From: Podarcis muralis
Taxonomy: Eukaryota
Reading direction: 5' to 3'
DNA: 64,000 nucleotides
Assembly: GCF_964188315.1 (NCBI RefSeq)
Contig: NC_135668.1
Location: 30,070,001-30,134,000, forward strand
Below are positions 8,448 through 64,000 of this stretch, one piece after another; positions within the stretch are counted from its first letter, which is position 1, and every line of letters starts with the position of its first letter. The translations under genes and the position numbers were made by a program. Below the pieces are notes generated by a model. The model made no database searches and was not told where the DNA came from. It saw nothing but the letters and a program-made list of their open reading frames with translations.

Positions 8448-10472
8448 GCATCTGGCAGTGCTGGAAGGCACTGGCCTCTTTTTGCATGTCAAGGGCAATA
8501 CCTTGTCTGGATTGTCCCTGTAGCTAAAATGGCCACATCCAGCTCCTAAAAAGGGGGTGGGGTCCTGTTGTGGTGGAAAGTGTTGTGGCGCCCCTCCTCA
8601 CTAGAGTCAAAAGCTGGGACTTCCTGCTCAGATTCTGCTCCCAGGCAGCTAGGAGAACTCTGCTGCCTGCAGTACAAGGGACCATCCTTGCCTAGGCTTT
8701 TTCTGTCTGCTCAGAGCAGAATCATCAAGCATTGAGAGGTGGACACCAGGCTTATATAAAGGGTCCTGCTGAGTTTCGCCTTTACAAAGTGCTGTGATGC
8801 AGGTGGTTAGAATTTCCCTTGGACACATGCAGATAAGAGACTCAGAAAGAGCCATGTGGCCCTGCAGGGACTCAGCAGTAGTGACTGCAGCAACAGCAGC
8901 AAGGTCTCCCAGGCCTATGAAAGCAAGTACATGATGATAAGCCTCCATGCCTTTCTGAAAGCATTTTGGAAGGGATTAATAGCTTGGGATTCTTAAAGTT
9001 CCTCAGATGCCTGCTACCCCTTCTTGAGAGGAAGCCCCAGCCACATACTATGAAAAGCAGGTTGGGGAAGCTCACTTACTCTTTTAGTGTAGAAGTTGGT
9101 AGGTTGTTGCTTGGTTTTTTTGCAGGCGCCAGAGAAGTAATTCTTAGCAAACTGCCCAGCTAACCTGGGCACTCAGCCCCTCCTAGCCTGCTGCCCTCCT
9201 GGTGTTCAGGACTATAATTCCCATTGGCCCCAGCCAGCACAGCTGATAGGAGCTAGTCCAAAATATCTGGAGGGTACCAGGCTGGGCTAGCGAGGCCCTG
9301 CTTGAATGTCTGTCTCGTGGCTGGTGCGTGAAAGGGTAGCCCATAGGCCCAGGGCTTGGAAGTGCCTTGCCTGCCCTCTCCCTCCAATTACTTGGAGCTG
9401 GGTGAAAGCTGTGCTCTTGCATTGAGGCCTCATTTGGGTGCCAGAACGCTCCTGCCCTGCTCCTTGGTGACAGTTTGGCCCTTCAGATCATGAAAATAGT
9501 TACCTGGGCAGGATTGGTGGCAGGACACAGCACAAGCAATTAAAAGGATTTTTATGGATAAAATTCTTCTCAGCCTAATAGGAGGGATCCATATTCTGTG
9601 CTCCTACCCACGTCTGTCATGTCAAACAAGCCCAAACCAATTCATCCTGAGCATGAGGGAATTCCTATGTGAGGAGCATGAAGTGCCTGCTGTCAGAGGG
9701 AAATGACTTTGTGATCCTCTTAGCAATGATTTGGGATGATCAATAAAAGTGCAAGATCTGTAGGGTAAGAGGAGTGAAGAAGATGTGAGTGTGCTCTACC
9801 CTTAAAAACCTCAAGTTTTTCTTTTCTTGATGGGTTTTTAACATAATGTAAAAGATTGTGCTACAGGCAGAGGGGTCTCCCGTTTGCTGGCTTGGTGGAA
9901 TACTCTTATAGGCTTCTAAAGCTGAGGTTTCAGAGTTCCCATTCTAATCAATAGGAGGGGGGGGTGCTCCACTGCATGTTTCTTTGGTGAATGGGAAGCA
10001 CATGATTGTCTTTGCTTCCCTCTGCCCTCAGCAGAGAAGATGAGTGAGGCTGAAAAACCCAGGAAAAGAAAGTAAGCTATACTGGGCAAGGCTCACCTTT
10101 GTGGAATTGGCATTGCTCTTAGGAAGACTTCATGGGACTGGAAAAAATGGGATACCAATATGCTACATAAAAAGTCTTCACTACTCCTGTGGCATGGAAG
10201 TGGAAGCAGGAAAATAAATTTACACTTTCCAAGTTCATGAGTGAATTATAAGCAATAAAGATGTGAGACAGTCTCAGCTCAAAAGTTTTTTTCTAGTGTT
10301 TCTTACAGCTTTTTCTACCCTCAAATCCTTATTTAAGTAATAAAATACTTAAATATTTCAAGTTAATTCTTCTGTTTTATTCTACAAATGTGCACTTAAC
10401 TGCATTCTTACATAAAGCAGCAAGAAGGGTCCCCCCCCCTTTAATTGGGTGGGGATTGAGGCTTTATTGTAA

Positions 10473-36031: not shown

Positions 36032-39000
36032 TTATCGGGCCACAGCATGTACATAGGTAGTCCATGGTCCACATACCACGTCTACTACACGTAGACCCCA
36101 GTCCACAAAGCAGGACACCCTCTTTGCCTCATCAGAGCTGGCTGTCTGCCCATGCCCCAGTTGGCCATATTTACCTGCAACCAAGAAGAGCTATTGGCAC
36201 CAGTTTGCCCTTGGAGCAGGAAGAGAAGATGGAGTGCTAACCCTAAGGGCAGCTGTAATCCACCCCCCAGCTTACTTACCCCAGCCCCAGGTGTAGAGCT
36301 CTCCTGTACCTGAAATACAAGGATGACCTGTGTTTAACTGAGGTTGTTGAAGGATAACAGTTGAGCACCTCTTTGGGGGAATGGGGCAGATCCAAGAAAC
36401 AATGGAAAAGGAGAAACCTTCAGGACCCTTTTACGCTATGTTGTGATTTCCCAACCATGCAAAAACCAAAGAGCTTGCGCTGTTTAGGAACTCCATGTGC
36501 AGCAATTTTGACAGTAAGCAGTTTTGGGAGGGCTGCTGGGCATCCTTACACATAAACTGTGTTAGACGTCACACACATTTTACGCTTGTTTGTCCTTCAC
36601 TCTTGGATGTTTCCCCTTCCACAAATGAGGCTCAGGCGGACAGCAACAGCCCCAGGATATTTTTCAGGTACTAGGCAGTGAAGCCTTCATCCTGCTGTCC
36701 CTGTGCTCCCCTCACTGAAAGACAAACCCAGCGTCCTCTTACATGTCACAGCAGCGGTGTGTCGTGAACCACAGCTGATCTTACAGACATCTGCCCCATC
36801 TGGCATATCCAGCAAAGCAGGGAAGGCTTGGATCGAAATGAATGCAGCCTTGCAGGGTCCTTGTGCTGCCTCCTGCTCTGCCAAGCTCAACTCCGTGTTC
36901 CCTAGAAACAACCCAGTATAAATAAAACTACCAAAGTCAACTCATACCCCAGCAACAGCTGTGGGGTGTAGTGTATGTTTGCTCTGGGCCAAGTTTGCCA
37001 ACAGAGCATCTAGCTCTGTCCCAGAAGTGGCCTCACCTCTCTTCACCTCTGCCGTGGTGGCTCTACTCTCAGCCACAGATTTGGAAGGTAGGGCCAGTTG
37101 TCCCGTCTCGTTCCAGCCCCAGACGTACAAATCACCTGCTTCTGGCAGAGAGTGAGAAAGAGAGCAGCTAGGAACTCTGTCCAGGACCAACGTGGCCTTT
37201 TCCCCCAAGGAAGAGGCCTCATAGGGCTGGCAAAATATATTCTCCAGTGAAAGCTGGTTCTGGCCCTATGAGGGATTTGGCTTCTCATGCAGAGGGGAGT
37301 TTATTATTTGAAAGCGATGGGAATGGGAAGGGCTGTAGCAGAAGCCTCACCCCCATCTTTATATTTTTGGGTTTATAACTTTAAGAAAGATTAAGACAGA
37401 AAAAGTAAATAAGGGCAAAGGAGGTAACTGTTAGCAGTATCTTTAACAGCTGTGAAGAAAGGGGAACTTCACTTCTGTAGGAGATGCATCTCTCAAAACC
37501 CCCATGAACAATTTAAGCAGCAGCAGTGGCTGATTGATGGTCTTAAGTCAGCCCTGGCCATGGAGGGAGGAGGTCCAACAAAAATATGTGGACAGCCACA
37601 GGGTCCCTGCCTCTGTTCAAGGAGCAGGAGCCCAGTTAACCCCTGACACCACATCAACAAGCCTCAAGAGGTTGGCATCAACACTTCCGTTGATATTTTT
37701 GTTGCTATTGTTATTACCAATGTAAAAAAGCAACACACAAACACACAAAATGTAAATGTAAAAAAGCAACACACAAGTCTATTTTGGGGTGCTGGAATCC
37801 CTAGCTAGTCATTGCTTAAGATGGGCCACTGCAGACCATGCCCTCCTGCCCCCTTACCACTAATGCCAGCTGAATGCCATCCTCCAGCCGCCACATCCAC
37901 CAGGGGCACCCCGTACAAGGCTTCCACCAGCTGGGGCTCTGTCCTGCTCTCCAGCTCCCCATGGCCCAACTGCCCGTGCCTGGGAAGAAAAGACAGGAGG
38001 AGGAGGAGGAGTAGCCACCATGCTTCCCCTCCCCCTCCGCCCAATGCAGAAGCCCACCTAGCACTAGGTAAGAACCTAAGAAGAGATCTGCCTGATCTGG
38101 CCAATGACCATTCTAGTCCAACATCCTGTTCTCATATTGGCCAACCAGATGCCTGTGGAAACCCACAAGCAGGATCTGAGCCTAAGAGCACCTCTCCCTT
38201 CCTCTACTGGCTTCCAGTAACTATGGAGGCAGAGCTTGCCATCATGGCTAGTAGTCATTGTGAGTTTTCTCCTCTATGAAGTTGCCCAACCCTCCTCTAA
38301 AGCTGCCAGCCATCACTGCCTCCTGCGGGAGGTCGGTTGCTAGTTTTAACCATAGCCCTGCTAGGAGGGCAACGCTAGTCCTCACCTGCGCCAGACTCAC
38401 CTGCCGCCTCCCCACGAGAAGAGGGCCCCCTCTGTGTTGAGCAGCACCGCATGCTCGTAGCCCAGGGCCAGCTTGCGAGCCTGCAAGGTGGAGGGCAGAG
38501 GGGTGAAGAAAGGGGGCAGAGGGGCCACGTACCCGCCAGGCACCAGGGGCAGCTCTAGGGCAGAAGAGAAAGAGGGTTAGGGGCAGAAGGGATGGCTCAT
38601 CCTGGGGTGCAGCAACAGCTTCCTCTTCTTTCAGGACGGCGCTTCTGCCAGCGCACCCACCTACCTACGGTCGCTGCTTCCTCAGGGAGGATCTCGCACC
38701 TCCACGCCGGCTCTCCTTCCAGGACCAGGGCCGAACCCTCCACCGGCCAGCTCTCCACCGCCGCCTCCCGCAGCACCAGCACGTGCGTCTCCGACGGCAG
38801 CACATCCCGGCAGTCCTCCGGCAGCGCCGCGCACACCGCGCCTTGCAACAGCACCGGGGGGGACCCTGCGGGAGGCAGAAGGCAAGACGGGGCGAGGGGG
38901 GCGGATTGGAGCTCTCAGTCCAAGCGGAGCAGGAGGCAAAGAAAGAATATCGGGGCCACAGAATAGGAGGAACCCCCCCCCCCGCCGCCACCAGAAAGGC

Positions 39001-54500: not shown

Positions 54501-57500
54501 CTGTCCCGGCCATAGGAGGAAATGCTCTCCCGTGTCAGGGCTTCCAGCAGCTGCTTGAGGAGCAATTTCAGCTCTTTGGATGTATCTACAGGAGAGGAAT
54601 CAGAGTTGAGGAGGTCTGAGCCTCCTCTGCTCCAGGCCAGCATGCGCAGCCCAGCCCCACCCAAGGCATCAGCACAGAGATGAGCTTGGCACGACACAAA
54701 GTGGATGCTGAGCCCAGCAGGGAGGCACCCAAGAGACTTACCCAAGACCACAGCTTCGTCCTTGCCACGCACATCCCTCTGCAGCCCCTCCTTCAGGGCA
54801 TCAAACATAACCTGCAGCAGGCTGTAGGTTGCCAGCGAGACTTGCTCGTCCTCCATCTCTAGGATAGCAAACAGGCGCTGCGGCCCCAGCTCAGAAAGGA
54901 TCACTGCAGTCTGAAAGAAGGGCAGCATCCACTGAGACTTGGGGAGGGATCCAGGCCTGTCTCTCAAGAACCAGTTACCTCCCCCACAATGCTCAGAGCA
55001 GAGCTGGATACCTGCCTAGTAGGCAACTCTACAAGTGCAACTGTGGTTTGTCAGCAGGAACTCTGAGGACCCATAAACTTACCCAAGGAGACAGAGTTCA
55101 GGGGTTTTTTTTATACTAGAGGAATATCTAGGTTATCTTGAAGCATGTATTACTTGAGGATTCAACAGTCTTGCTAGCCCTCTGTCCCCCACGGTAAGTG
55201 ATCATAGAATTGTAGGGTTGGAAGGGACCCAATGGGTCTTTCGGTTCAACCCCCTGAAATGCAGGAATCACAGCTAAAGTATCCCTGACAGGTGGCCATC
55301 CAAACTCTGCTTTAAAACCTCCAGTGAAGGAGAGTCCATCCCCTGGAGGGCGTCCATTTCAAGAGGTTGAACAACACCAGGCCCAGGACAGAACCCTGCA
55401 GTACCCCACTTGTCACTGGACAAGGAACTGTTGGGGAGCACTCTTTCTGAATCACTGGTGGTTAGCCAGACTCCAGCAAATAGGAAGCCCTAGGTTTCCT
55501 CTCAACACTGGAGCAGCAGAGAGGGAGGGGTGATTCCATCCCCTTCCCCAGCCTGAAACATGGGCGAAAACTCAACTCTGTGCTTGCCAGGAGGATGCAT
55601 AACCTGTCAGTAAACGGACCTAACATGTTACCCCCTCCCCCCAAAAAAAGAGTGAAGAAGCTTTCATCTTAAAAAGTGGACATACCCGAGAACGATGCCC
55701 ACTGCAAAGGCCAGTGAGGGTTCGCACAGCTGCAAGCACCGTGTCCGCCCGACCTGTATCCAGCAGCTGTAGCAGGAGGCGCACCCCGTCGTTCTGGAAA
55801 ATCTTCTCAGCACCAGGCTCCTCACGAGCCAAAACAATCAAATTCTGGGCTGCCTGGACAGGAGAACAGCCAGTTAGCTGGACAAAGGGGCTCGCTTTAA
55901 CCGCTCCCCATCAGGCCACACAGCTGATGGATGGGCACAGCCAGAATTTAGAGCTGGAGAGGTTTGGGGATTCTGGCCCATAATAACTCCATTGTCCTTG
56001 CTTCTCTAAGAGCCATGGGGGTGGGGATCTCCTCCTTGGGCAGAGCTGGGAAGCCTGCAGAGTCCCTCCAGGTGCTGCTGCACTGTAACTCCCATCAACA
56101 TTAGCATGACTTTATGTTATACAAATCCCATGAGACAGAATGAATCACTCTAGACTGAGACTAATCGTACTAAAATAAGCACCACCCTAATATATTCTGG
56201 TTTTGTCAGTCACGGAAAAGGAAGTTACGGTACAATGACTCAAAGTCCTCCTCCCTTCCTCCCTCAGGTATCCTGATCCAGGCATCAGAAACCCTTCCTC
56301 TGGCTTTTGCCTACAGGCAATTTTGGAAATGCAAAACTTGCATTTTGAAATAGAAAACAGAATTGGAGACTGCCTAATTCTACAACTGCATCCCATATAT
56401 GTACAGCTGCAGCACACCCAAAATTGCTCTTCATCAGGGCACATCACACCTCCTACCTGCTTGCTGATTAGAGGGGTACCTTTTGTTTCTTGTCCAGATC
56501 TTTTTCTTCAGGGTCCAGCAGCAACTTAAACATCTGCTCCACTTTGGAGTCTGTGCGGGACATAGCTGTCATCTGAAGCAAACAGGCAGTTGGTGAGAAA
56601 CCCCACAGTCGTACTTCAGAAGCCCAGTACACACCTGAAGCCCAGAATCCTTCCTGGGTGGAGAGCTAGGCTACCCCACAAGGGAGGCGCCTACCCTGGC
56701 AATGCCCACACTCCCCCAATGCTTCTCCTACCTTCTCATGCATGCTGCTGCCAAGGTTGCGCAGAGCCTCCTGGAAGGCCTTGTTCTTGGGCTCCAGGCT
56801 CACACATCTCTGCAGGTCCAGGAGGGCCTGGTCGAAGCGGCCCAGTTTCTGCCGGGCTTGGCTGCGCCGGAAGAGGCTCTTCACGTCATGCCCATCAGCT
56901 TCTATAGCTGTGAACAGGCAAGAAAGTATTAAGAGGCAGCAAAGAGGCTTCTGCAGAGAAAGAGACTTTTGGAAGGAGAGTAATCCCCCACCCCACCCCT
57001 TGCAGCTCACCTTTAGAAGCGTCCAGTTCTGCCTGGACATAGTCCTCCTGCAAAAGAAGCAGAATGCCAGAGAGGCATTGGTGAAAGGAGATGTAAGCGG
57101 GGGAGCGGGGCGGGGGAGTGAGGGGAGAAGAAAATACTCAAGAGGAGCTCAGGCTGAAAATGACAGCCCTGACCACCTTTCTGGGGGGCATCTGTCAAAT
57201 CCTAAATTCTCTGCAGGTTACAGGAGGAGGAGGAGGAGGCAAGGCATCAGGCTGGCCTCTCACTATATGACCACTGTCTTCTCAGTCCGTCATAGCCAGA
57301 CAGCCAGGCCCGAGGGCTCCCCTTGACTGTGCATAAAGGCGCCTCAGCTTCTAAGGAGCAGCAGGGTGAAAAGAAGTCCACCTAAAGGGGCTCAGCACAG
57401 TTAAAATGAGAGATGCACAGAAACGTTGACCCTGGGGGCACAGGGAAGCTCTGTGGCCATTTAGGGGAAAACACACACACAATGCCTGCTACCTTCTGAT

Positions 57501-57974
57501 GCGTACTACGTCACTTGAGAATTTTGAGAAGAAAAGACACGAGAAGAAAAGAATTTTGAGAAGAAAAGACAATAATCCCTTAGAATTTCCCCAGGAGTGT
57601 CCAACTTTTCTCCTTCTGCAGAAGTGAGCGGCAGGTAGGCAGGCTGGCACTGCCCCTTGGGGGGCTACCATAACTCAGGCAACCCTCCCGCTTTCCCCAC
57701 TTCCCCACTCACCAGCTTGAGGTGGCAGGCGGCGCGGTTGCGGTGGAGGACAGCGCGGTGCGGGCCGGGCTCCTCGCCATCCCCAGGGCAGAGGCTGAGG
57801 GCCCGGGTGTAGGCGGCCAGCGCCTCCTCATAGCGGCCTGTCTGGAAGAGCTCGTTGCCCTCCCGGCGGAGCTCCGGGACCTGCGGAGATAAGAGGGGCG
57901 GGGTGGATGAGCGACTCGGTTTGGGGGTCAGCTGGGCTCCCACCGCCCACCCCACTCACCGCCGTCTCCTCCAT
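48586..57974 (-). CDS. UNC45A: Unc-45 myosin chaperone A (TPR + UCS), 941 aa
   Basis: Minus exons 57974-57960, 57880-57713, 57047-57011, 56907-56732, 56572-56480, 55853-55686, 54910-54742, 54585-54415, 54331-54160, 53236-52936, 52785-52691, 52401-52260, 50717-50577, 50409-50282, 49963-49897, 49782-49669, 49583-49468, 49355-49238, 49158-49003, 48864-48586 (2826 nt). [63 protein letters not shown]; next to RCCD1 as in mammals. Confidence 0.96.
51740..52088 (+). mobile_element. CR1 LINE 3' fragment in UNC45A intron 12
   Basis: aagaaagaagattcccactaaacattaggaagaaccttctgac ... gggttggactagatgacccttgg...ttccaactctacaattcta; a reverse-oriented CR1 tail lies at 55200-55345. Confidence 0.75.
53400..54050 (-). 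mobile_element. L2-clade LINE 3' fragment in UNC45A intron 9
   Basis: Minus ORF fragment [15 protein letters not shown] resembles the L2 ORF2 motif ..HALVTSRLDYCN..; AT-rich tail toward 53400. Confidence 0.6.
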
Positions 57975-59605
57975 GGCGCGCTCTAGTGACGCCACGCGAG
58001 CGCGACAGCCGCTCCCTAGCCGACCCACGTGCTGGCAGCGCCTCCCTTGGAGCGCCCAGCGGAGAAGAGACTGGGCGGCCCGGGAGCGGAGCTGCTCCAC
58101 CTCCCGCCGCGCCCGCCCCGCGTGCCTTCTTGCCGGCTTCCTGTTTCTTGCAGGGGCACCTCCCGAGGATTCGTCGGTGGAGGAGGCGGTGGAAGCTGCG
58201 CTGGTGGAGGCGGTAGAAGTGAAGGAAGTCGACGGTCATGAGGGCCAGGACGAGGCAGCCGTAGAGCCCCACGCCCAACAGCGGCCCCAGCGGGCTCCTG
58301 TGGAGGGAAAGCGGGCTCAGACGGAAGGACGGGAGGAAGAGGGGCAGAGGGGAACCCCCAACACCCCCCCCGCCCCCCCCCAAGGGCATCTCACCGGGGC
58401 GCGGCTGGCGGAGCAGAAGCCGAGGCATTGCCGCGGAGCCTCTCAAATTCGGGCCGTGGGCAGCAGGACTTGAAGCGGCGAGAGGCAGCAGGCAGGCAGC
58501 AGTAGGCGTGGGTCGGGGGGTCGGTGAGGCGTGGGCAGTAGAAGCCGGCGTGGTGGAGCCCGGCGGGGTCCAGGTAGCCCTCGCAAAGGTGCACGTTTTG
58601 GGTACCAGCTGGAAAGAGGAAGCGATTGGAACAAGCTGGGTGCTCGGGGGGCTGCCCTCCCTGCCGGGGCTCGCGGGAGAATTGCGGGGAGGGGGGAGGA
58701 TACTGCTGCTCCAGCCCTGCTGAAAGCCCACACAGGAGGACCCCGGGGAGGGGGCAGGCAGGTCCAGGGACTGCCGTTTCAGCGTCTCTTCGGTCGCATG
58801 GCTATAGAGTGGTTGGCAGTCCTGTGGAAGCGGGCTGAACAGCGAGGGAAAGTATCCTAATAAATAAGGCTGCAAAGTCGCGGACACTTCTGCTAGAGGA
58901 GAACCACTTCCTGCCCTGAGCCAGATCAGACCTCTAACAACCAGTACCCAGGGTCCAGGGACATTTGTTTCCCATAAAGAGTAAAGCCAAACCCACTAAA
59001 GACTGAAAGTGACTGGTTCTGTGCTAAGGGATTTGAGGGTACCCAGTTCCAATCAGACAGATCTGCATTGGCAAGGCACAGAAGTCTGTCTGGTGAAGTT
59101 GTCCTTGGGTTGAAAGATGCAAGGAGCTGGGAAAGGTTTTCCTCATACTGACTGGGAAACTGAGCAGAGCACTTGCAGGCAAACTGGCCTATGAACACAA
59201 GCTTAACTCTCTGTCTCAAACACATTCATGCACGCACTCCAATTGTCATGCACACAAACACAGGCCCATCATTCCTTGTCAACATGCTTGGATCCTGGGT
59301 TGATTCCTTCCTCCAGCTGGTGGGACACCCCAGAGCAAGTGGCACCCTGCAAACAGGGCTTTTACTTAGCTCTAGGATGGCCCTGAAGCCCCTGAGAGTG
59401 AGAGTCTTGCTCGAAGCAGATCTGCACATGGGCTGAGAAGCCCCTGGGAGACTATAGAGACTGCAATTTCAAAGTGTGGGTTTGGCACGGCAAGTTGGAG
59501 CTCCTGGGGGGCTACTGGGCTGGTGGGGAAGGGAGAGAAGGGAGACCAGATGCAGGTACCTGTCCTGAGAAAGGCCAGCAGCAGCAGGCAGGGCAAGAGC
59601 AGCAT
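57928..59605 (-). CDS. Shisa-like single-pass membrane protein related to SHISAL1/KIAA1644 (~209 aa)
   Basis: Minus exons 59605-59560 (signal peptide [16 protein letters not shown] at -3), 58608-58395 (six-Cys domain [31 protein letters not shown]...[13 protein letters not shown] sequon), 58297-57928 ([23 protein letters not shown], basic tail). Phases 1 and 2 match, GT-AG sites canonical. C-terminal end uncertain. Confidence 0.8.
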
Positions 59606-60364
59606 CTTCCCGGCAGCGGCAGCAGTGTTGAAGGCTGAGGCAGCTCTGACTGTCTCCTCCTAGGGAGGGAAAGCAAAGAAACCACACAGAGCTGCCTGGC
59701 TCCCGCATCCATTACCGGGTACCATCAAGCACCTCCCTGCGCCATTAGGCCAGGCTGCACTTAACGGCTTGCCTCTGCAGGGACCTTGCCAAGCTGGGGG
59801 CAGGGAAGATCCATTAGGGAAGCGACCTGGCTAATGGGAGGGGCCAGAGTTTGGCCTAGTAGTGGGGAGAAACGATGTGGTCAGGAGCCTCCCCAGCGGG
59901 GTCTTCAGCTCAGGAGAAAGGCCCAGGGGGCTTTTTACACCAAGGCAGGCCTCCACTCAGAATCCAGGCACCTGCTGTGTTCAACATCAGGAAAGACAGA
60001 CAAGCACTTTCTGGGCAGCGTCCCATATTGGCGGGGGCGGGGGGCAGGTTTCTACAGAACAAACAGCCAAGAATCCAGGAGCACTTCTCTTGGGTATGGG
60101 TTTTACTGGGCTAGATAATATTCATCTACTGTAAGAATGTAAGAAGAGCCTACTGGATCTAGCCAGCATCCTGTTTTCACAGTAGCCAACCAGGTGCTGA
60201 ACCCTAACCCTGTGGGAAACCCCCAAGCTGTAGGCAACAAAAGTTTGCATTTGGCTTCCTAATAGTGTCACTGGTGTTCTTGGTTGCATTTGTAACACTC
60301 AGGGTTTTGTCATGGTCTGGAGCTACACCTTTTGATGAGGGTAACTGATTGGTCTCTAACCCTT

Positions 60365-60415
60365 GGTCTTGTCACCTGGGAGGTCTTGTCACCTGGGTGG
60401 TCTTGTCACCTGGGA
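60365..60415 (+). repeat. 17-bp minisatellite, 3 copies
   Basis: ggtcttgtcacctggg(a/t) x3. Confidence 0.9.
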
Positions 60416-63377
60416 GATAAGGACCTCTGTATGCACTGCCCAGGCTTGGGCTCCATGGAAGGTCACTTCAGAGCTACCAATGCAGCGGTTTGACTCTTCA
60501 GGAGATGTGGTTCCATTGTCCTGTTTGTGAAATGGAACTTCCCCTCCCTCTGCCTGTGTTGTCCCCTAATACCATTCAGAGTGGGGCAGGGATTCTGGAA
60601 CAGATTTAGGGGGTGCATGGGGAGAAGAAAGTGAGGAGGGAGCTCTGTGATACAACCAGAGATTCTCACACTAATGAACCTACTTTGCTGGATGCTGCCC
60701 TATAGAATCAAAACACTGATTGTGTCCATTAAAAAAAATTCCATTGTTAAATTTTAGAACATGAAACATTGGGTCAAACTGAAGAAGTAACTGGATAGAG
60801 AATCCCTCAGGCTTTGCACACAGAAGGTCCCAGGCTCGATCCCTGGTGGTATCTCCCCCGAAAGGTTTTGGGCCATAACCACTCCATACTTCATTTCCAG
60901 GAGTTCTGCTCAGATCCTCATTTCTCATTGACCGCAATCAGAATTAGATTGCATTAATCATTCATAAAGCTGGCACAAGTCCTTTCAGAAAGGTTTGTAA
61001 TTAGGGCTTTGTTTTTTCTCTTAATTGGCCATATTTCTTTTAAGGGTGGGATCTGTGCATGCTTGCCTATGTCCTGTCATACTTCCAGTTAATGATTCAG
61101 ATGACTTTGCAGTTCTACCTTTTCCACTGCCTGCTACCTGACCTTTTTGTTTTTTCCCTTGAGCTGCTCCTAGGGATTGAATCTGGGACCTTTCAATGTG
61201 CAAAGGCGGTTGCTCTACCCCCCGTTTCCATTCTTTCCTTTTGGAGGTGCATAAAACCCCATGAGGCACATCCTGAGAACTCCCTTACTGCTTTCCCTGC
61301 CAGTGGCCTAAGCCCACAGAGCTCCCAGCATGATTCTTCGTAAGGGGTGCCCCTTCACACTTCCTGCAGGATTGGCCCTTCACTGAGAGAGCTCCTGCCT
61401 TCTGTTTATACTAGGAGTTTAGGGAATAAAGAATGGGATGGGTTGGGTGCGGTGTCTCTCACCTTTTGAGCACATTTGCAAGGAGAGATGAGTCCTCTTG
61501 CCTGTCTACTGACTGTGGGGCAGGGGAGGCAGGCTTGAGGCCAAGAAGCTGCTAGCTTGCCAGGCACTGCTCCTTGCGATGAGAGACTGGCTGCTTGACA
61601 GGTGCTCCAGTCGACTTAGGAAGCCCTACCTTTGCCCTGCCACACCTCCTGATCCCCACTTGGGAACCTGCACTACAGGTAAGGACAGGGCCTGGGAAAC
61701 AACACGTGTGACCTCTTGCTCCTTCACCCATCCTTCAGGGGCTGCCACCCACCCCACAATGCCTGAGCTCAAAGGTGCCATTCCCCTCTCAAGCATCAAA
61801 AAGCAGCCGCAGCACATGAAACCAGCCTACCTATCACAGCCCAAGCCTCTCCGCAGCTGATGTCCACATCAGTTTGCTCTCCTTCTGGCCAGGGTCTCTA
61901 CAAACCCAGGTACAATCTGGTTCTGGCCGCCGTGGTGCCTGCCCCATGAGACATGGATCGCTTCCCCTCAAAGGGAAGCTGCCTTTTCTGGTTCCTATCC
62001 TGGTGTCAGTGCAGCTGTTCTATCCACTGTCCCATTGTGCAGCAAGAAGCAACCATCCAGGAGCCACTAGAGACCATCCAGCTTGTTCAGAGCATCCCCA
62101 GGAAGACTTTTCCTGGTGCCGGATCAGTACTGCAGGTGGAACGTGGCTCTGCAGTGACCAGCATGCCCACTGGACAGAGAGAGCAGCTCTCGGGCGCTGC
62201 CTCTGTCCCTTCCTGGGGAGTTGCCTGAGCTTTGGTGATGCTGGTCCCCATGACAACCAGAGGTGCCCTAGAGGCTGGTGCTGCCAAGAGGGGAGGGAAC
62301 TGGTGCCTGAGATCCCCAGCAAGGGCTGCAGTCTTGGCAGGTGCCCTATGTACGTACCTGCAGCCAGAGCGAGGCCCTCCTTAACAGCTGTACCTGGGGG
62401 GAAGGAAAGCGTCCAGGGAGATATCCTTCCCACATCTCTCTCCCCTAACCCCAAGTAAACCTAACCTTTGGTCATTAGCCAGTTACTCAAGTGAACCGCC
62501 CTGAGACCCCCCAGGTATGAAGCAATATATAAATTTGATTAATAATAGGTAACATCCCATGCACTGCTCGGGGTTACGGGTGTCATTTGGGATTCCCTCA
62601 TATTGAGCCACAATGGCTAGAGGCGGGAAGGGAGTGGCAGTGCTGAACCCCCACACTGGGCAGAATGGCTTGGGCAAATCGCAGCACAGTAAGTTTTTCC
62701 ACCTGTAAAGTGGGAATGCCGGCACCCGCTTGACAAATTGTTAAAAACCACTGGAGAGAGATTTTAAACCACCTGGCTGTACAGACAGCAGTAGACACGC
62801 TCTGTCACTGTCTTGCTTGTTCTCCCACCCCACCCCAATCCCTACCCCCTCCTGGCCACCATTTTCTTGGGACAGAGAGAAGGGGAGCAAAAAGAAGCAG
62901 AGGGGGTTCCCCTTCCCCATCCAGTTTGAAATGGCTGTTCTGGGCTGAACACTAGCATTTTGCCCTGGAAAAAGCATGAAGTGTCCAGCATGCCTTTGCA
63001 TTTTGAATCCTTCCACTGCAAACTTGAATCTGGAGGTGGGAAGGGAAATTGACAGCCAAAGTTGCTCTGGATCCATTCACAGCAGGGACATCGACACTCA
63101 AGAAGGTCTTCCTGATAAGGCAATGGCCCTCATGCACTTTTCATTTTGGAAATTAAGCGGGGAGAGGGGCATGGGCATAGCCAGAATTTTTGTTTGGGGG
63201 GACAGAACCTTTGTTTGCTATGTGTATTTATTGAATTGTATTGATTGGGGGGCAGCTGCCCCCCTTGGCTATGCCCATGGAGAGAGGGTGAGTCTCAAGG
63301 ATTTGAGAGGGGTCAAGTGGCTCCCTCTGGTCACACGTCTTCCATGACCTTTCTGCTCTGGCTTTGCAGATCTAGAG

Positions 63378-63711
63378 CAGGGGTCTGCAACCCACGGCTC
63401 CGGAGCCGCATGTGGCTCTTTTACATCTTTGCCGCGGCTCCGGGGCGGATACTAGCGAGGGGAGGAGGCGCATTGTGCGCCCCGACACTCCTCACTGTGG
63501 CGGGCGCTGTACTGGCTGTGACGTCGCATGGGGGCGGTGCGTGCGTTAGTCACACACCGTCCCGACGTCACCTTCCCGCCCGCTGTCAGATCGCGGCTCC
63601 GGAGATATATTTGTTTTAAATGTCGCAATGGTTTTGCGGCTCCCAGTTGTTGTTTTTTCTTCGGAAACGGGTCCAAGTGGCTTTTTTTGTCTTAAAGGTT
63701 GCAGACCCCTG
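63378..63711. mobile_element. Non-autonomous hAT (Charlie-like) element, 334 bp
   Basis: Perfect 15-bp TIR caggggtctgcaacc / ggttgcagacccctg; perfect 8-bp TSD atctagag (63370-63377, 63712-63719); CpG-rich interior. Confidence 0.92.
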
Positions 63712-63833
63712 ATCTAGAGGATTGTGCACACCCACACAGAACTACCCCCGCCCCCACGTTCCCTTCCTGAGATCTGGACCACGAGAAGCCAGGCCCAAAG
63801 CACAACTTGAGAGCCAAACACTTTAAAAAACAT

Positions 63834-63839
63834 TTTATT
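63834..63839 (-). terminator. Possible poly(A) signal of an upstream minus-strand gene (MAN2A2 by mammalian synteny)
   Basis: Plus tttatt = minus AATAAA near the window edge; no coding exon of that gene is visible, so the identity is inference only. Confidence 0.25.
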
Positions 63840-64000
63840 TTGTTTCCTAAAAACTTGTTCTGAACTCCAGGAAGCTCACAAGTTGTAATGTCCTTCCAGT
63901 GTTTGCTACATCGAGTCTGTCTCCTTCTTGAAGGAGCTGTGAAACGGAGCCTCCAGGGTGCGAACTTAGAGCTCTCCTTTCCTGAAAGCTGAGAGGGCGG

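What the first reader, a model, noticed from the sequence alone, without database searches (positions are those of the whole stretch)
57928..59659. Divergent SHISAL1/KIAA1644-like paralogue with no counterpart I know of at the mammalian UNC45A locus
Seen: signal-peptide exon, six-Cys exon (C..C..CC..CC) and TM exon with matching phases. Recalled human SHISAL1 has VCEPY.D..G..H.GFHCPRL.D......CC......FKYCC...EF and ALLGVWIYG..VL.L...D, the same pattern, but SHISAL1 lies on another chromosome (22q13). Inference: an ancient duplicate retained in reptiles and lost in mammals. Established: Shisa-family proteins act as transmembrane adaptors for receptors and channels.
Basis: partly seen in the sequence, partly recalled or inferred. 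Interest (0 to 1): 0.7.

Follow-up and report, generated by a model that had tools for sequence, protein, structure and literature searches.

The report
UNC45A-linked Shisa-like gene, already annotated
A small membrane-protein gene related to SHISAL1 does sit just upstream of UNC45A in this lizard, but the same gene is already predicted at that spot in birds, turtles, frogs, fishes and several mammals, so it is an unstudied but ordinary gene, not a reptile-only relic.

Summary
On the minus strand there are three exons (59605-59560, 58608-58395, 58297-57928) with fitting phases. They encode a signal peptide, a six-cysteine Shisa_N domain (Pfam 24.2 bits, cut-off 22) and one transmembrane helix.

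The paralogue reading also holds. The gene is not the true SHISAL1 orthologue: an AU test rejects that placement (p 0.0006).

- **Already annotated.** Orthologues are RefSeq models in dozens of birds and turtles, and in newts, frogs, a caecilian, coelacanth, bichir, sturgeon and teleosts. They are named 'shisa-like-1', 'shisa-like-1a' or 'uncharacterized'.
- **Same position.** The gene lies just upstream of UNC45A in every locus read: after MAN2A2 in turtle, finch and frog, and with UNC45A next downstream in bichir.
- **Not lost in mammals.** In the prairie vole it lies between HDDC3 and UNC45A. Whales and pangolin have it too, and a capuchin model looks degenerate.

Lizard RNA support is thin. 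One short contig shows the intron 2 junction, the intron 1 junction was not seen, and two bulk RNA runs gave no reads. The 3' end is unresolved, because the reading frame runs through the UNC45A start codon and no poly(A) signal follows.

Function as a Shisa-type membrane adaptor is inferred only; no PY motif is present. Interest is low.

The parts
59660..59870 (-). Conserved proximal promoter-like block with four TAATGG/CCATTA motifs (59709, 59742, 59811, 59832)
   Evidence: It aligns with L006 955-1190 with the motifs invariant and weakly with finch L002 9202-9321 (E 1e-7). Four motifs lie in 124 bp, against 21 in the whole 64 kb.
59560..59659 (-). Exon 1: presumed 5' UTR plus CDS 59605-59560, a signal-peptide-like leader of 15 codons plus 1 base
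   Evidence: The leader and its ATG context are conserved in L006, where it lies in one reading frame with the Cys domain. The start of transcription is not mapped.
58609..59559 (-). Intron 1 (GT..AG, phase 1); splicing not seen in reads
   Evidence: An X1 contig runs unspliced from 58394 to beyond 60300, and no 59560/58608 joint was found.
58395..58608 (-). Exon 2: six-Cys Shisa_N ectodomain (Cys span 58460-58585) and an N-x-S sequon (58421-58429)
   Evidence: Pfam PF13908 at 24.2 bits. 52-64% identity to bird and turtle orthologues. All six Cys fall in invariant or near-invariant columns. Matches PDB 5M0W.
58298..58394 (-). Intron 2 (97 nt, GT..AG, phase 2, G-rich)
   Evidence: A spliced 58-nt contig in X1 joins 58296/7 to 58394/5. 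The donor and acceptor are conserved in L006.
58216..58297 (-). Start of exon 3: transmembrane helix (about 58216-58284)
   Evidence: It aligns with the TM of the orthologues (the LYG...D.xHF columns). tblastx matches turtle L001 12886-12972.
58140..58215 (-). Conserved basic juxtamembrane segment
   Evidence: It resembles the newt, frog and turtle tails (pattern YRLxQxxF..L...R.G[KR]).
57928..58139 (-). Unconserved Gly/Ala/Arg-rich tail of the reading frame, with stop TGA at 57930-57928. It runs through UNC45A exon 1 into UNC45A intron 1
   Evidence: In L006 the frame stops 18 nt before the UNC45A ATG. Tails of the orthologues do not align. No AATAAA or ATTAAA lies downstream. The true C-terminus is unverified.
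57960..57974 (-). UNC45A start codon and first coding exon (ATG 57974-57972, donor GT 57959-58), inside the Shisa-like reading frame
   Evidence: RNA reads carry loose ends at 57881 that match this exon.
57713..57880 (-). UNC45A exon 2 (TPR start), the downstream neighbour gene
   Evidence: 25-36x depth in raw RNA reads, spliced on to 57046. Collinear with turtle and finch UNC45A down to 48616.

Best explanation
This is the wall-lizard orthologue of an old, unnamed sister gene of SHISAL1 (KIAA1644). That gene has sat head-to-tail just upstream of UNC45A since before ray-finned fishes and tetrapods split.

It encodes a small type I membrane protein with these parts:
- a cleavable leader
- a six-cysteine Shisa-type ectodomain, presumably with three disulfides
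- a conserved N-glycosylation sequon
- one transmembrane helix
- a short conserved basic juxtamembrane stretch
- a free-evolving tail

By analogy with Shisa and Shisa-like proteins it most likely acts as an accessory subunit or adaptor. It would bind another membrane protein through its ectodomain and helix and affect that partner's trafficking or surface level. Because it has no PY motif, it probably does not work by recruiting NEDD4-type ligases.

Shown here: gene structure, domain, orthology, synteny, distinction from SHISAL1, presence in mammals. Inferred: topology, disulfides, glycosylation, adaptor role. The squamate copy is intact but fast-evolving and weakly expressed, and its 3' end relative to the UNC45A promoter is unresolved.
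For: - **Domain:** Pfam Shisa_N above cut-off; profile hit to the Shisa3 CRD 5M0W with the Cys columns aligned.
- **Orthologues:** 56 annotated bird and turtle proteins at E down to 8e-17. An exhaustive profile search found only 104 representatives, which fall into clear motif groups.
- **Synteny:** MAN2A2, then this gene, then UNC45A on one strand in turtle, finch and frog. In the vole HDDC3 lies between MAN2A2 and this gene. In the bichir UNC45A is next downstream.
- **Tree:** the SHISAL1 clade has 100/99 support and the window groups with the amniote UNC45A-linked rows. Window-with-SHISAL1 is rejected at p 0.00057. Monophyly of the UNC45A-linked group is not rejected at p 0.17.
- **Constraint:** crude dN/dS is 0.19-0.45 against frog, turtle and finch.
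- **Second squamate-like locus (L006):** it keeps the leader, all six Cys, the intron 2 splice sites, the TM and the promoter block.
- **RNA:** the intron 2 junction appears in an X1 contig. X1 also holds spliced UNC45A, so it is RNA.
Against: - Raw reads of two bulk RNA-seq runs gave no reads on the three exons, while UNC45A exon 2 had 25-36x.
- Intron 1 splicing was not seen. The X1 contig is unspliced there and continues upstream, so read-through or pre-mRNA could explain the coverage.
- dN/dS against L006 is 0.77, and the window has a long branch of 0.71.
- No poly(A) signal lies between the stop and UNC45A exon 4.
- The tail has no PY motif and is not conserved, so the adaptor mechanism rests on family analogy only.
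- Mammalian copies fall below Pfam's threshold.
Confidence: 0.82

Rival explanations
1. The lizard copy is a decaying or already non-functional remnant. The exons are still open, but selection is relaxed and the gene is no longer expressed as its own mRNA.
For: - No reads in X23 or X24.
- dN/dS is 0.77 against L006, and coding identity (about 70%) is no higher than that of the promoter block (67%).
- The branch is long.
- The frame runs through the UNC45A start codon with no poly(A) signal.
- A capuchin model shows that decay does happen in this gene.
Against: - All six Cys, the CPRL core, the sequon, the TM, the juxtamembrane motif and canonical splice sites are intact in both the window and L006, and the one exon 2 indel is in frame.
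- The promoter block is conserved.
- A spliced junction is present in X1.
- Shared GC-rich codons deflate dS in the squamate pair, so 0.77 is an overestimate.
- The tissue of X23 and X24 is unknown.
Confidence: 0.12
2. The exons are not an independent gene in this lizard. Instead they serve as upstream exons of read-through or alternative UNC45A (or MAN2A2-UNC45A) transcripts.
For: - Same strand as UNC45A, with the frame overlapping UNC45A exon 1 and no poly(A) signal in between.
- The X1 contig extends upstream beyond 60300 without a visible start.
- A fin whale gene model fuses the two.
- An X5 contig runs unbroken across UNC45A intron 1.
Against: - No read or contig joins a Shisa-like exon to UNC45A exon 2.
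- X1 depth drops from 10.9 on exon 3 to 1.5 before UNC45A exon 1.
- A conserved promoter block lies directly upstream of exon 1.
- Separate gene models exist in most species.
- Conservation of the protein over more than 400 million years makes sense only if it is translated.
Confidence: 0.05
3. It is the true SHISAL1 orthologue, moved next to UNC45A in reptiles.
For: NCBI names many orthologues 'protein shisa-like-1'. SHISAL1 is the closest named family.
Against: - The AU test rejects it (p 0.00057), and the SHISAL1 clade is starred at 100/99 without it.
- A turtle has a separate SHISAL1-type gene on a 352-Mb chromosome.
- Chicken SHISAL1 lies beside PRR5 (PMC9641642).
- The UNC45A linkage also holds in frog, bichir and vole.
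Confidence: 0.01

Closest known systems
RefSeq/Gnomon models 'protein shisa-like-1', 'shisa-like-1a' or 'uncharacterized LOC' next to UNC45A (for example XP_026640037.1 Microtus ochrogaster, XP_069077545.1 Pleurodeles waltl, XP_051776811.1 Erpetoichthys, zebra finch P0015, Carettochelys P0004)
   Same: Same position upstream of UNC45A on the same strand. Same core motifs (LCEGY, GFYCPRL, YCC, KSCC), sequon, TM and juxtamembrane segment. Same exon 2 to TM-exon split (the models' first exons were not mapped here). 52-64% identity over exon 2.
   Different: The lizard copy was not seen as an annotated protein in the collections searched. It has a long branch, and its tail reads through the UNC45A start codon. 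Mammalian copies have LCQT in place of LCEGY and fall below Pfam's threshold.
SHISAL1 (KIAA1644), human 22q13 beside RTL6 and PRR5
   Same: Same architecture and the same six-Cys pattern. It is the nearest named family: its representatives score 55-88 bits against the profile.
   Different: It is a separate starred clade with different motifs (VCEPY, HFGFHCPRLSDNK, FKYCC). Its genomic neighbourhood differs (PMC9641642), and its conserved tail (MNYDICK...) is absent here.
Shisa3 cysteine-rich domain, PDB 5M0W
   Same: The ectodomain is homologous by profile (E 2.7e-6). Cys 1, 2, 3-4 and 5-6 align.
   Different: Shisa proper has eight Cys, and the extra pair falls in a gap here. It also has long Pro-rich tails with PY motifs, from family knowledge (PMC10531659 abstract; PMC8621455 introduction citing Pei and Grishin 2012). 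No PY motif is present here.
SHISAL2A/SHISAL2B (FAM159A/B)
   Same: Six-Cys Shisa-like single-pass proteins, thought to be transmembrane adaptors (PMC8621455).
   Different: Far more distant. No named vertebrate FAM159 protein was recognised among the 104 representatives of the profile search. Only a few 36-38-bit CSGY-motif proteins appear; the one whose source was looked up is from a springtail.

Membership tests
Shisa / Shisa-like superfamily (Pfam Shisa_N, PF13908) | N-terminal Cys-rich domain that matches the family profile above its curated cut-off | tested here: met
   24.2 bits against a cut-off of 22, E 3.6e-5. Profile hit to the Shisa3 CRD 5M0W at E 2.7e-6.
Shisa / Shisa-like superfamily (Pfam Shisa_N, PF13908) | Signal peptide, then ectodomain, then a single transmembrane helix (type I) | tested here: met
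   A hydrophobic leader in exon 1 and a helix of about 22 residues followed by Arg/His/Lys in exon 3, read from the sequence. Both are conserved in the orthologues. No dedicated predictor was run.
Shisa / Shisa-like superfamily (Pfam Shisa_N, PF13908) | Pro-rich cytoplasmic tail with PY ([PL]PxY) motifs | tested here: not met
   No [PL]PxY in the window's tail, in 21 orthologue tails or in 12 SHISAL1 tails.
Six-Cys 'Shisa-like' subgroup (KIAA1644 / FAM159 type) | Six rather than eight conserved Cys: C, C, CC, CC | tested here: met
   Cys at positions 8, 24, 36, 37, 48 and 49 of the exon 2 peptide; these are invariant or near-invariant columns. The extra Shisa3 Cys pair falls in a gap. The six-versus-eight rule is from PMC8621455.
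SHISAL1 (KIAA1644) orthogroup | Falls inside the SHISAL1 clade | tested here: not met
   The SHISAL1 clade has 100/99 support without it. The constrained tree is 27 log-likelihood units worse, AU p 0.00057.
SHISAL1 (KIAA1644) orthogroup | Lies in the SHISAL1-PRR5 neighbourhood | tested here: not met
   It lies directly upstream of UNC45A, with RCCD1 further down. SHISAL1-PRR5 linkage is described in PMC9641642.
UNC45A-linked SHISAL1 paralogue (RefSeq 'shisa-like-1/1a' models) | Immediately upstream of UNC45A on the same strand, downstream of MAN2A2 (or HDDC3) | tested here: met
   The UNC45A side is met in the window. MAN2A2 lies outside the window. The full arrangement is seen in turtle, finch, vole and frog, and the UNC45A side in bichir.
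UNC45A-linked SHISAL1 paralogue (RefSeq 'shisa-like-1/1a' models) | Group motifs: LCEGY, GFYCPRL(T/S)D, YCC, KSCC, N-x-S sequon, LYG...D.xHF helix, basic juxtamembrane segment | tested here: met
   Alignments A1 and A2; tails. The nearest rows in the tree are turtles and birds.
UNC45A-linked SHISAL1 paralogue (RefSeq 'shisa-like-1/1a' models) | Transcribed and spliced as a three-exon mRNA | tested here: inconclusive
   The intron 2 junction appears in one 58-nt X1 contig at depth 3.9. The intron 1 junction was not seen. There were no raw reads in X23 or X24.
SHISAL2A/B (FAM159) | Sequence similarity at family level | tested here: not met
   No named vertebrate FAM159-type protein was recognised among the 104 hits at E below 1e-3. 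Only a few 36-38-bit CSGY-motif proteins appear; the one looked up is from a springtail.

The most novel reading that the evidence does not exclude
The UNC45A-linked gene is a distinct fourth Shisa-like orthogroup, sister to SHISAL1, that no paper in the searched library names or discusses. It has been held head-to-tail against the UNC45A promoter since before ray-finned fishes and tetrapods split. Its last exon overlaps the UNC45A promoter CpG island and, in the lizard, the UNC45A start codon. The tight linkage might therefore reflect coupled regulation, with transcription of one gene gating the other. The gene is decaying in some mammals, such as a primate, while staying intact in others.
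Probability: 0.3. Interest if true: 0.45.

Novelty: new member of a known kind. Interest (0 to 1): 0.25.

Why it matters
Mostly as a correction. The gene is neither reptile-specific nor unannotated, and it is not lost in mammals. Three modest points remain:
- Automated names ('shisa-like-1', '-1a', 'uncharacterized') hide the fact that vertebrates have two old SHISAL1-type genes. The same '-1a' label is used both for this gene and for a teleost protein of the true SHISAL1 type.
- No paper in the searched library treats this gene, so its function is open.
- It is packed tightly against the UNC45A promoter in many lineages. That makes it a possible source of mis-annotated UNC45A 5' ends and fusion models (fin whale), and it could be used to test for transcriptional interference.

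Tried and rejected
- **Joined protein.** Exon 2 and the TM piece were used apart, and the dN/dS counts were added, not the sequences.
- **Word search.** The search with exon 2 gave only birds and turtles. It also missed P0100 although they share 5-mers, so its blanks (no squamate, no mammal) were not trusted. The exhaustive profile search was used instead.
- **MAN2A2.** tblastx of the turtle and finch loci found no MAN2A2 exon at 59700-64000.
- **Synteny look-ups.** The coelacanth protein is not on record. The stingray gene has no neighbour within 10 kb. The Caretta SHISAL1 gene spans 80 kb with no neighbour shown.
- **Rooting.** Rooting on tunicates made the UNC45A-linked group paraphyletic, and one long tunicate row jumped into the turtles. 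That row was dropped and monophyly tested instead. The time of the duplication is therefore left open.
- **Literature.** Pei and Grishin 2012 (PMC3295595) is not held.
- The first dN/dS run used a wrong frame for L006 exon 3; it was redone.
- **Not done.** The structure was not predicted, because the profile hits already settle the fold family. Human sequence was not looked at or searched. Whether squamate RefSeq sets hold a model of this gene was not settled.
Full report
**What is there**

On the minus strand:
- An ATG at 59605 opens a 15-codon hydrophobic leader that ends at a GT donor (exon end 59560).
- Exon 2 (58608-58395) follows an AG and ends at a GT.
- Exon 3 starts at 58297 after an AG and stays open to a TGA at 57930-57928.

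The exon 2 peptide carries six Cys (C, C, CC, CC). It matches Pfam Shisa_N above the curated cut-off (24.2 bits against 22). Exon 3 begins with a helix of about 22 residues followed by basic residues. A profile built from this exon and its orthologues hits the solved Shisa3 cysteine-rich domain 5M0W (E 2.7e-6). The six Cys align, and the extra Shisa Cys pair falls in a gap.

All searches used single exons by reference.

**It is a known, annotated gene**

A word search with exon 2 returned 56 proteins, all from birds and turtles. They are 52-64% identical at E down to 8e-17 and are named 'protein shisa-like-1', 'shisa-like-1a' or 'uncharacterized LOC' by NCBI.

Their genes sit where ours does:
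- In a turtle (L001) and the zebra finch (L002) the order is a glycosyl-hydrolase-38 gene (MAN2A2), the Shisa_N gene, then UNC45A, then RCCD1 in the finch, all on one strand.
- In the window, UNC45A exons run from 57880 down to 48616, with RCCD1 near 38400. MAN2A2 itself is not within 59700-64000.

An exhaustive profile search of 1.84 billion representatives gave only 104 hits, which sort by core motif.
- **UNC45A-linked type** (LCEGY, GFYCPRL, YCC, KSCC): found in newts, frogs, a caecilian, coelacanth, bichir, sturgeon and paddlefish, a mormyrid and smelts.
- **True SHISAL1 type** (VCEPY, HFGFHCPRLSDNK, FKYCC): a separate large group.
- **Other SHISAL1-like (CEPY-type) representatives:** lamprey, hagfish, shark and ray proteins, which the tree puts on the SHISAL1 side.
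- **Outliers:** tunicates have 'KIAA1644 homologs', and a few weak CSGY-type hits appear, one of them from a springtail.

The linkage to UNC45A also holds in the frog Ascaphus and in the bichir. It therefore predates the split of ray-finned fishes and tetrapods.

**Mammals have it**

A third motif variant (HLCQT..., still with six Cys) is mammalian. It occurs in prairie vole (XP_026640037.1), Alexandromys, Lemmus, gray whale and pangolin, plus Logan-only clusters.
- In the vole the order is MAN2A2, HDDC3 (opposite strand), this gene, then UNC45A 223 bp further on.
- A fin whale model of 993 aa is this protein (residues 1-108, 98% identical to the gray whale protein) fused to UNC45A.
- A capuchin model has lost one Cys of the last pair and the RL of CPRL, and it looks degenerate.
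- Mammalian copies fall below Pfam's threshold, which may be why they go unnoticed.

I did not look at human sequence.

**Paralogue, not orthologue**

I built a maximum-likelihood tree of 46 rows and 100 columns; the window is represented by exon 2 only.
- True SHISAL1 is a starred clade (100/99). SHISAL1 plus cyclostome and cartilaginous-fish sequences is another (100/99).
- The window sits with the amniote UNC45A-linked rows, nearest to turtles.
- Holding the window with SHISAL1 costs 27 log-likelihood units (AU p 0.00057).
- Holding all UNC45A-linked rows together is not rejected (p 0.17).
- Rooting on long tunicate branches is unreliable, so I do not date the duplication.

A sea turtle has a separate SHISAL1-type gene on a 352-Mb chromosome. 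A paper places chicken SHISAL1 next to PRR5 on NC_006088 (PMC9641642).

**A second squamate-like locus**

P0100 comes from a 3488-nt Logan contig (L006, run SRR32478113; species not known to me). The contig is collinear with window 59838-56477 at 67-84% DNA identity.
- The same leader lies in one reading frame with the Cys domain, with no intron 1.
- The intron 2 donor and acceptor are conserved.
- The frame stops 18 nt before the UNC45A ATG.

This supports exon 1 as coding. It also shows that the window's last 65 or so codons, which read through the UNC45A ATG (57974-57972) and first donor into UNC45A intron 1, are lineage-specific. Tails of the orthologues do not align beyond a basic juxtamembrane segment shared by newt, frog, turtle and the window.

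**Constraint**

Crude Nei-Gojobori ratios, with counts of the exon 2 and TM pieces added, are as follows:

| Comparison with the window | dN/dS |
|---|---|
| frog | 0.19 |
| turtle | 0.30 |
| finch | 0.45 |
| L006 | 0.77 |

dS is saturated in the old pairs. In the squamate pair it is deflated by shared GC-rich codons. The window also has a long branch (0.71). The gene is constrained over the long term, but constraint within squamates is not shown.

**RNA**

The earlier notes call this genome a wall lizard; I did not test that.

*Raw reads.* About 12% of each of two bulk RNA-seq runs (X23, X24) was read. UNC45A exon 2 had 25-36x, spliced to exon 1 and to 57046. No read fell on the Shisa-like exons. 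The tissue is unknown.

*Contigs of run X1.* X1 is RNA, since it holds spliced UNC45A.
- Exon 3 (58036-58298) is covered at depth 10.9.
- A 58-nt contig at depth 3.9 joins 58296/7 to 58394/5, which is exactly intron 2.
- A 2020-nt contig runs unspliced from exon 2 through intron 1 and exon 1 to beyond 60300.

So one junction is confirmed and the other is not. Pre-mRNA or read-through from upstream cannot be excluded. There is no AATAAA or ATTAAA on this strand between 58300 and 56000, so the 3' end is open.

**How it probably works**

Shown: a leader, a Shisa-type six-Cys ectodomain, a conserved N-x-S sequon, one helix and a basic inside segment. Together these indicate a type I membrane protein.

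Inferred from the family: Shisa and Shisa-like proteins are described as transmembrane adaptors (PMC8621455 introduction, PMC10531659 abstract). On that basis this protein likely acts as an accessory subunit for another membrane protein. The PY-motif route is not supported, because no [PL]PxY occurs in any tail of this group or of SHISAL1.

**Literature**

115 papers mention SHISAL1 or KIAA1644. In the 25 listed (title and start of abstract seen, two of them read further) the mentions are gene lists or synteny, and none treats the UNC45A-linked gene.

**Verdict**

The paralogue reading is right. 'No mammalian counterpart', 'lost in mammals' and the novelty claim are wrong. The lizard copy is a new member of an already auto-annotated but unstudied gene. 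Interest is low.

Noticed in passing
window 59660-59870 (minus strand); L006 955-1190; L002 9202-9321: A promoter-like block directly upstream of exon 1 is conserved between the lizard and the L006 species, and weakly in the finch. It holds four TAATGG/CCATTA motifs in 124 bp; the whole 64-kb window has 21, and three of its four CTAATGG sites lie here. From memory, this resembles Isl1/Nkx6-type homeodomain sites, which would fit cell-type-restricted expression.
   Followed up: partly
window 57928-58300 and 56000-58300 (minus strand): There is no AATAAA or ATTAAA between the Shisa-like stop and UNC45A exon 4. The Shisa-like frame contains the UNC45A ATG (57974-57972) and first donor. Where the upstream mRNA ends is unknown.
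   Followed up: partly
window 57712-57969: A 1619-nt contig of run X5 (depth 92) runs unbroken across UNC45A intron 1 (57881-57959). Raw reads of X23 and X24 splice it out. This suggests an intron-retaining or alternative 5' form of UNC45A.
   Followed up: no
window 60163-60194: A stretch of about 31 nt has much higher depth in X5, reads on both strands, and loose ends on both sides that differ between runs. It looks like a piece of a dispersed repeat expressed elsewhere.
   Followed up: no
L006 1193-1320 and 1780-1970: In the L006 species the Shisa-like gene has no intron 1; about 20 extra codons link the leader and the Cys domain. UNC45A's start and the TPR exon lie in one open stretch (no intron 1 there), 18 nt after the Shisa-like stop.
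   Followed up: partly
L002 9202-10001 (zebra finch): The finch RefSeq model P0015 starts at 10001 with a non-signal N-terminus. The conserved promoter block lies about 700 bp upstream, so the model probably misses the real first exon. N-termini of many bird models differ in the same way.
   Followed up: no
P0164 (Balaenoptera physalus, 993 aa): This gene model fuses the Shisa-like protein (residues 1-108) to UNC45A. It is probably an annotation artefact caused by the tight spacing.
   Followed up: partly
P0075/P0179 (Synchiropus) against P0063, P0067, P0072: NCBI uses the name 'shisa-like-1a' both for a teleost protein of the true SHISAL1 type and for the UNC45A-linked gene in other species, so the name does not mark orthology.
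   Followed up: partly
L005 11076-15269 (Ascaphus truei): A 1397-aa ORF with a weak DUF1759 hit (retrotransposon-like) lies on the opposite strand inside intron 1 of the frog orthologue.
   Followed up: no
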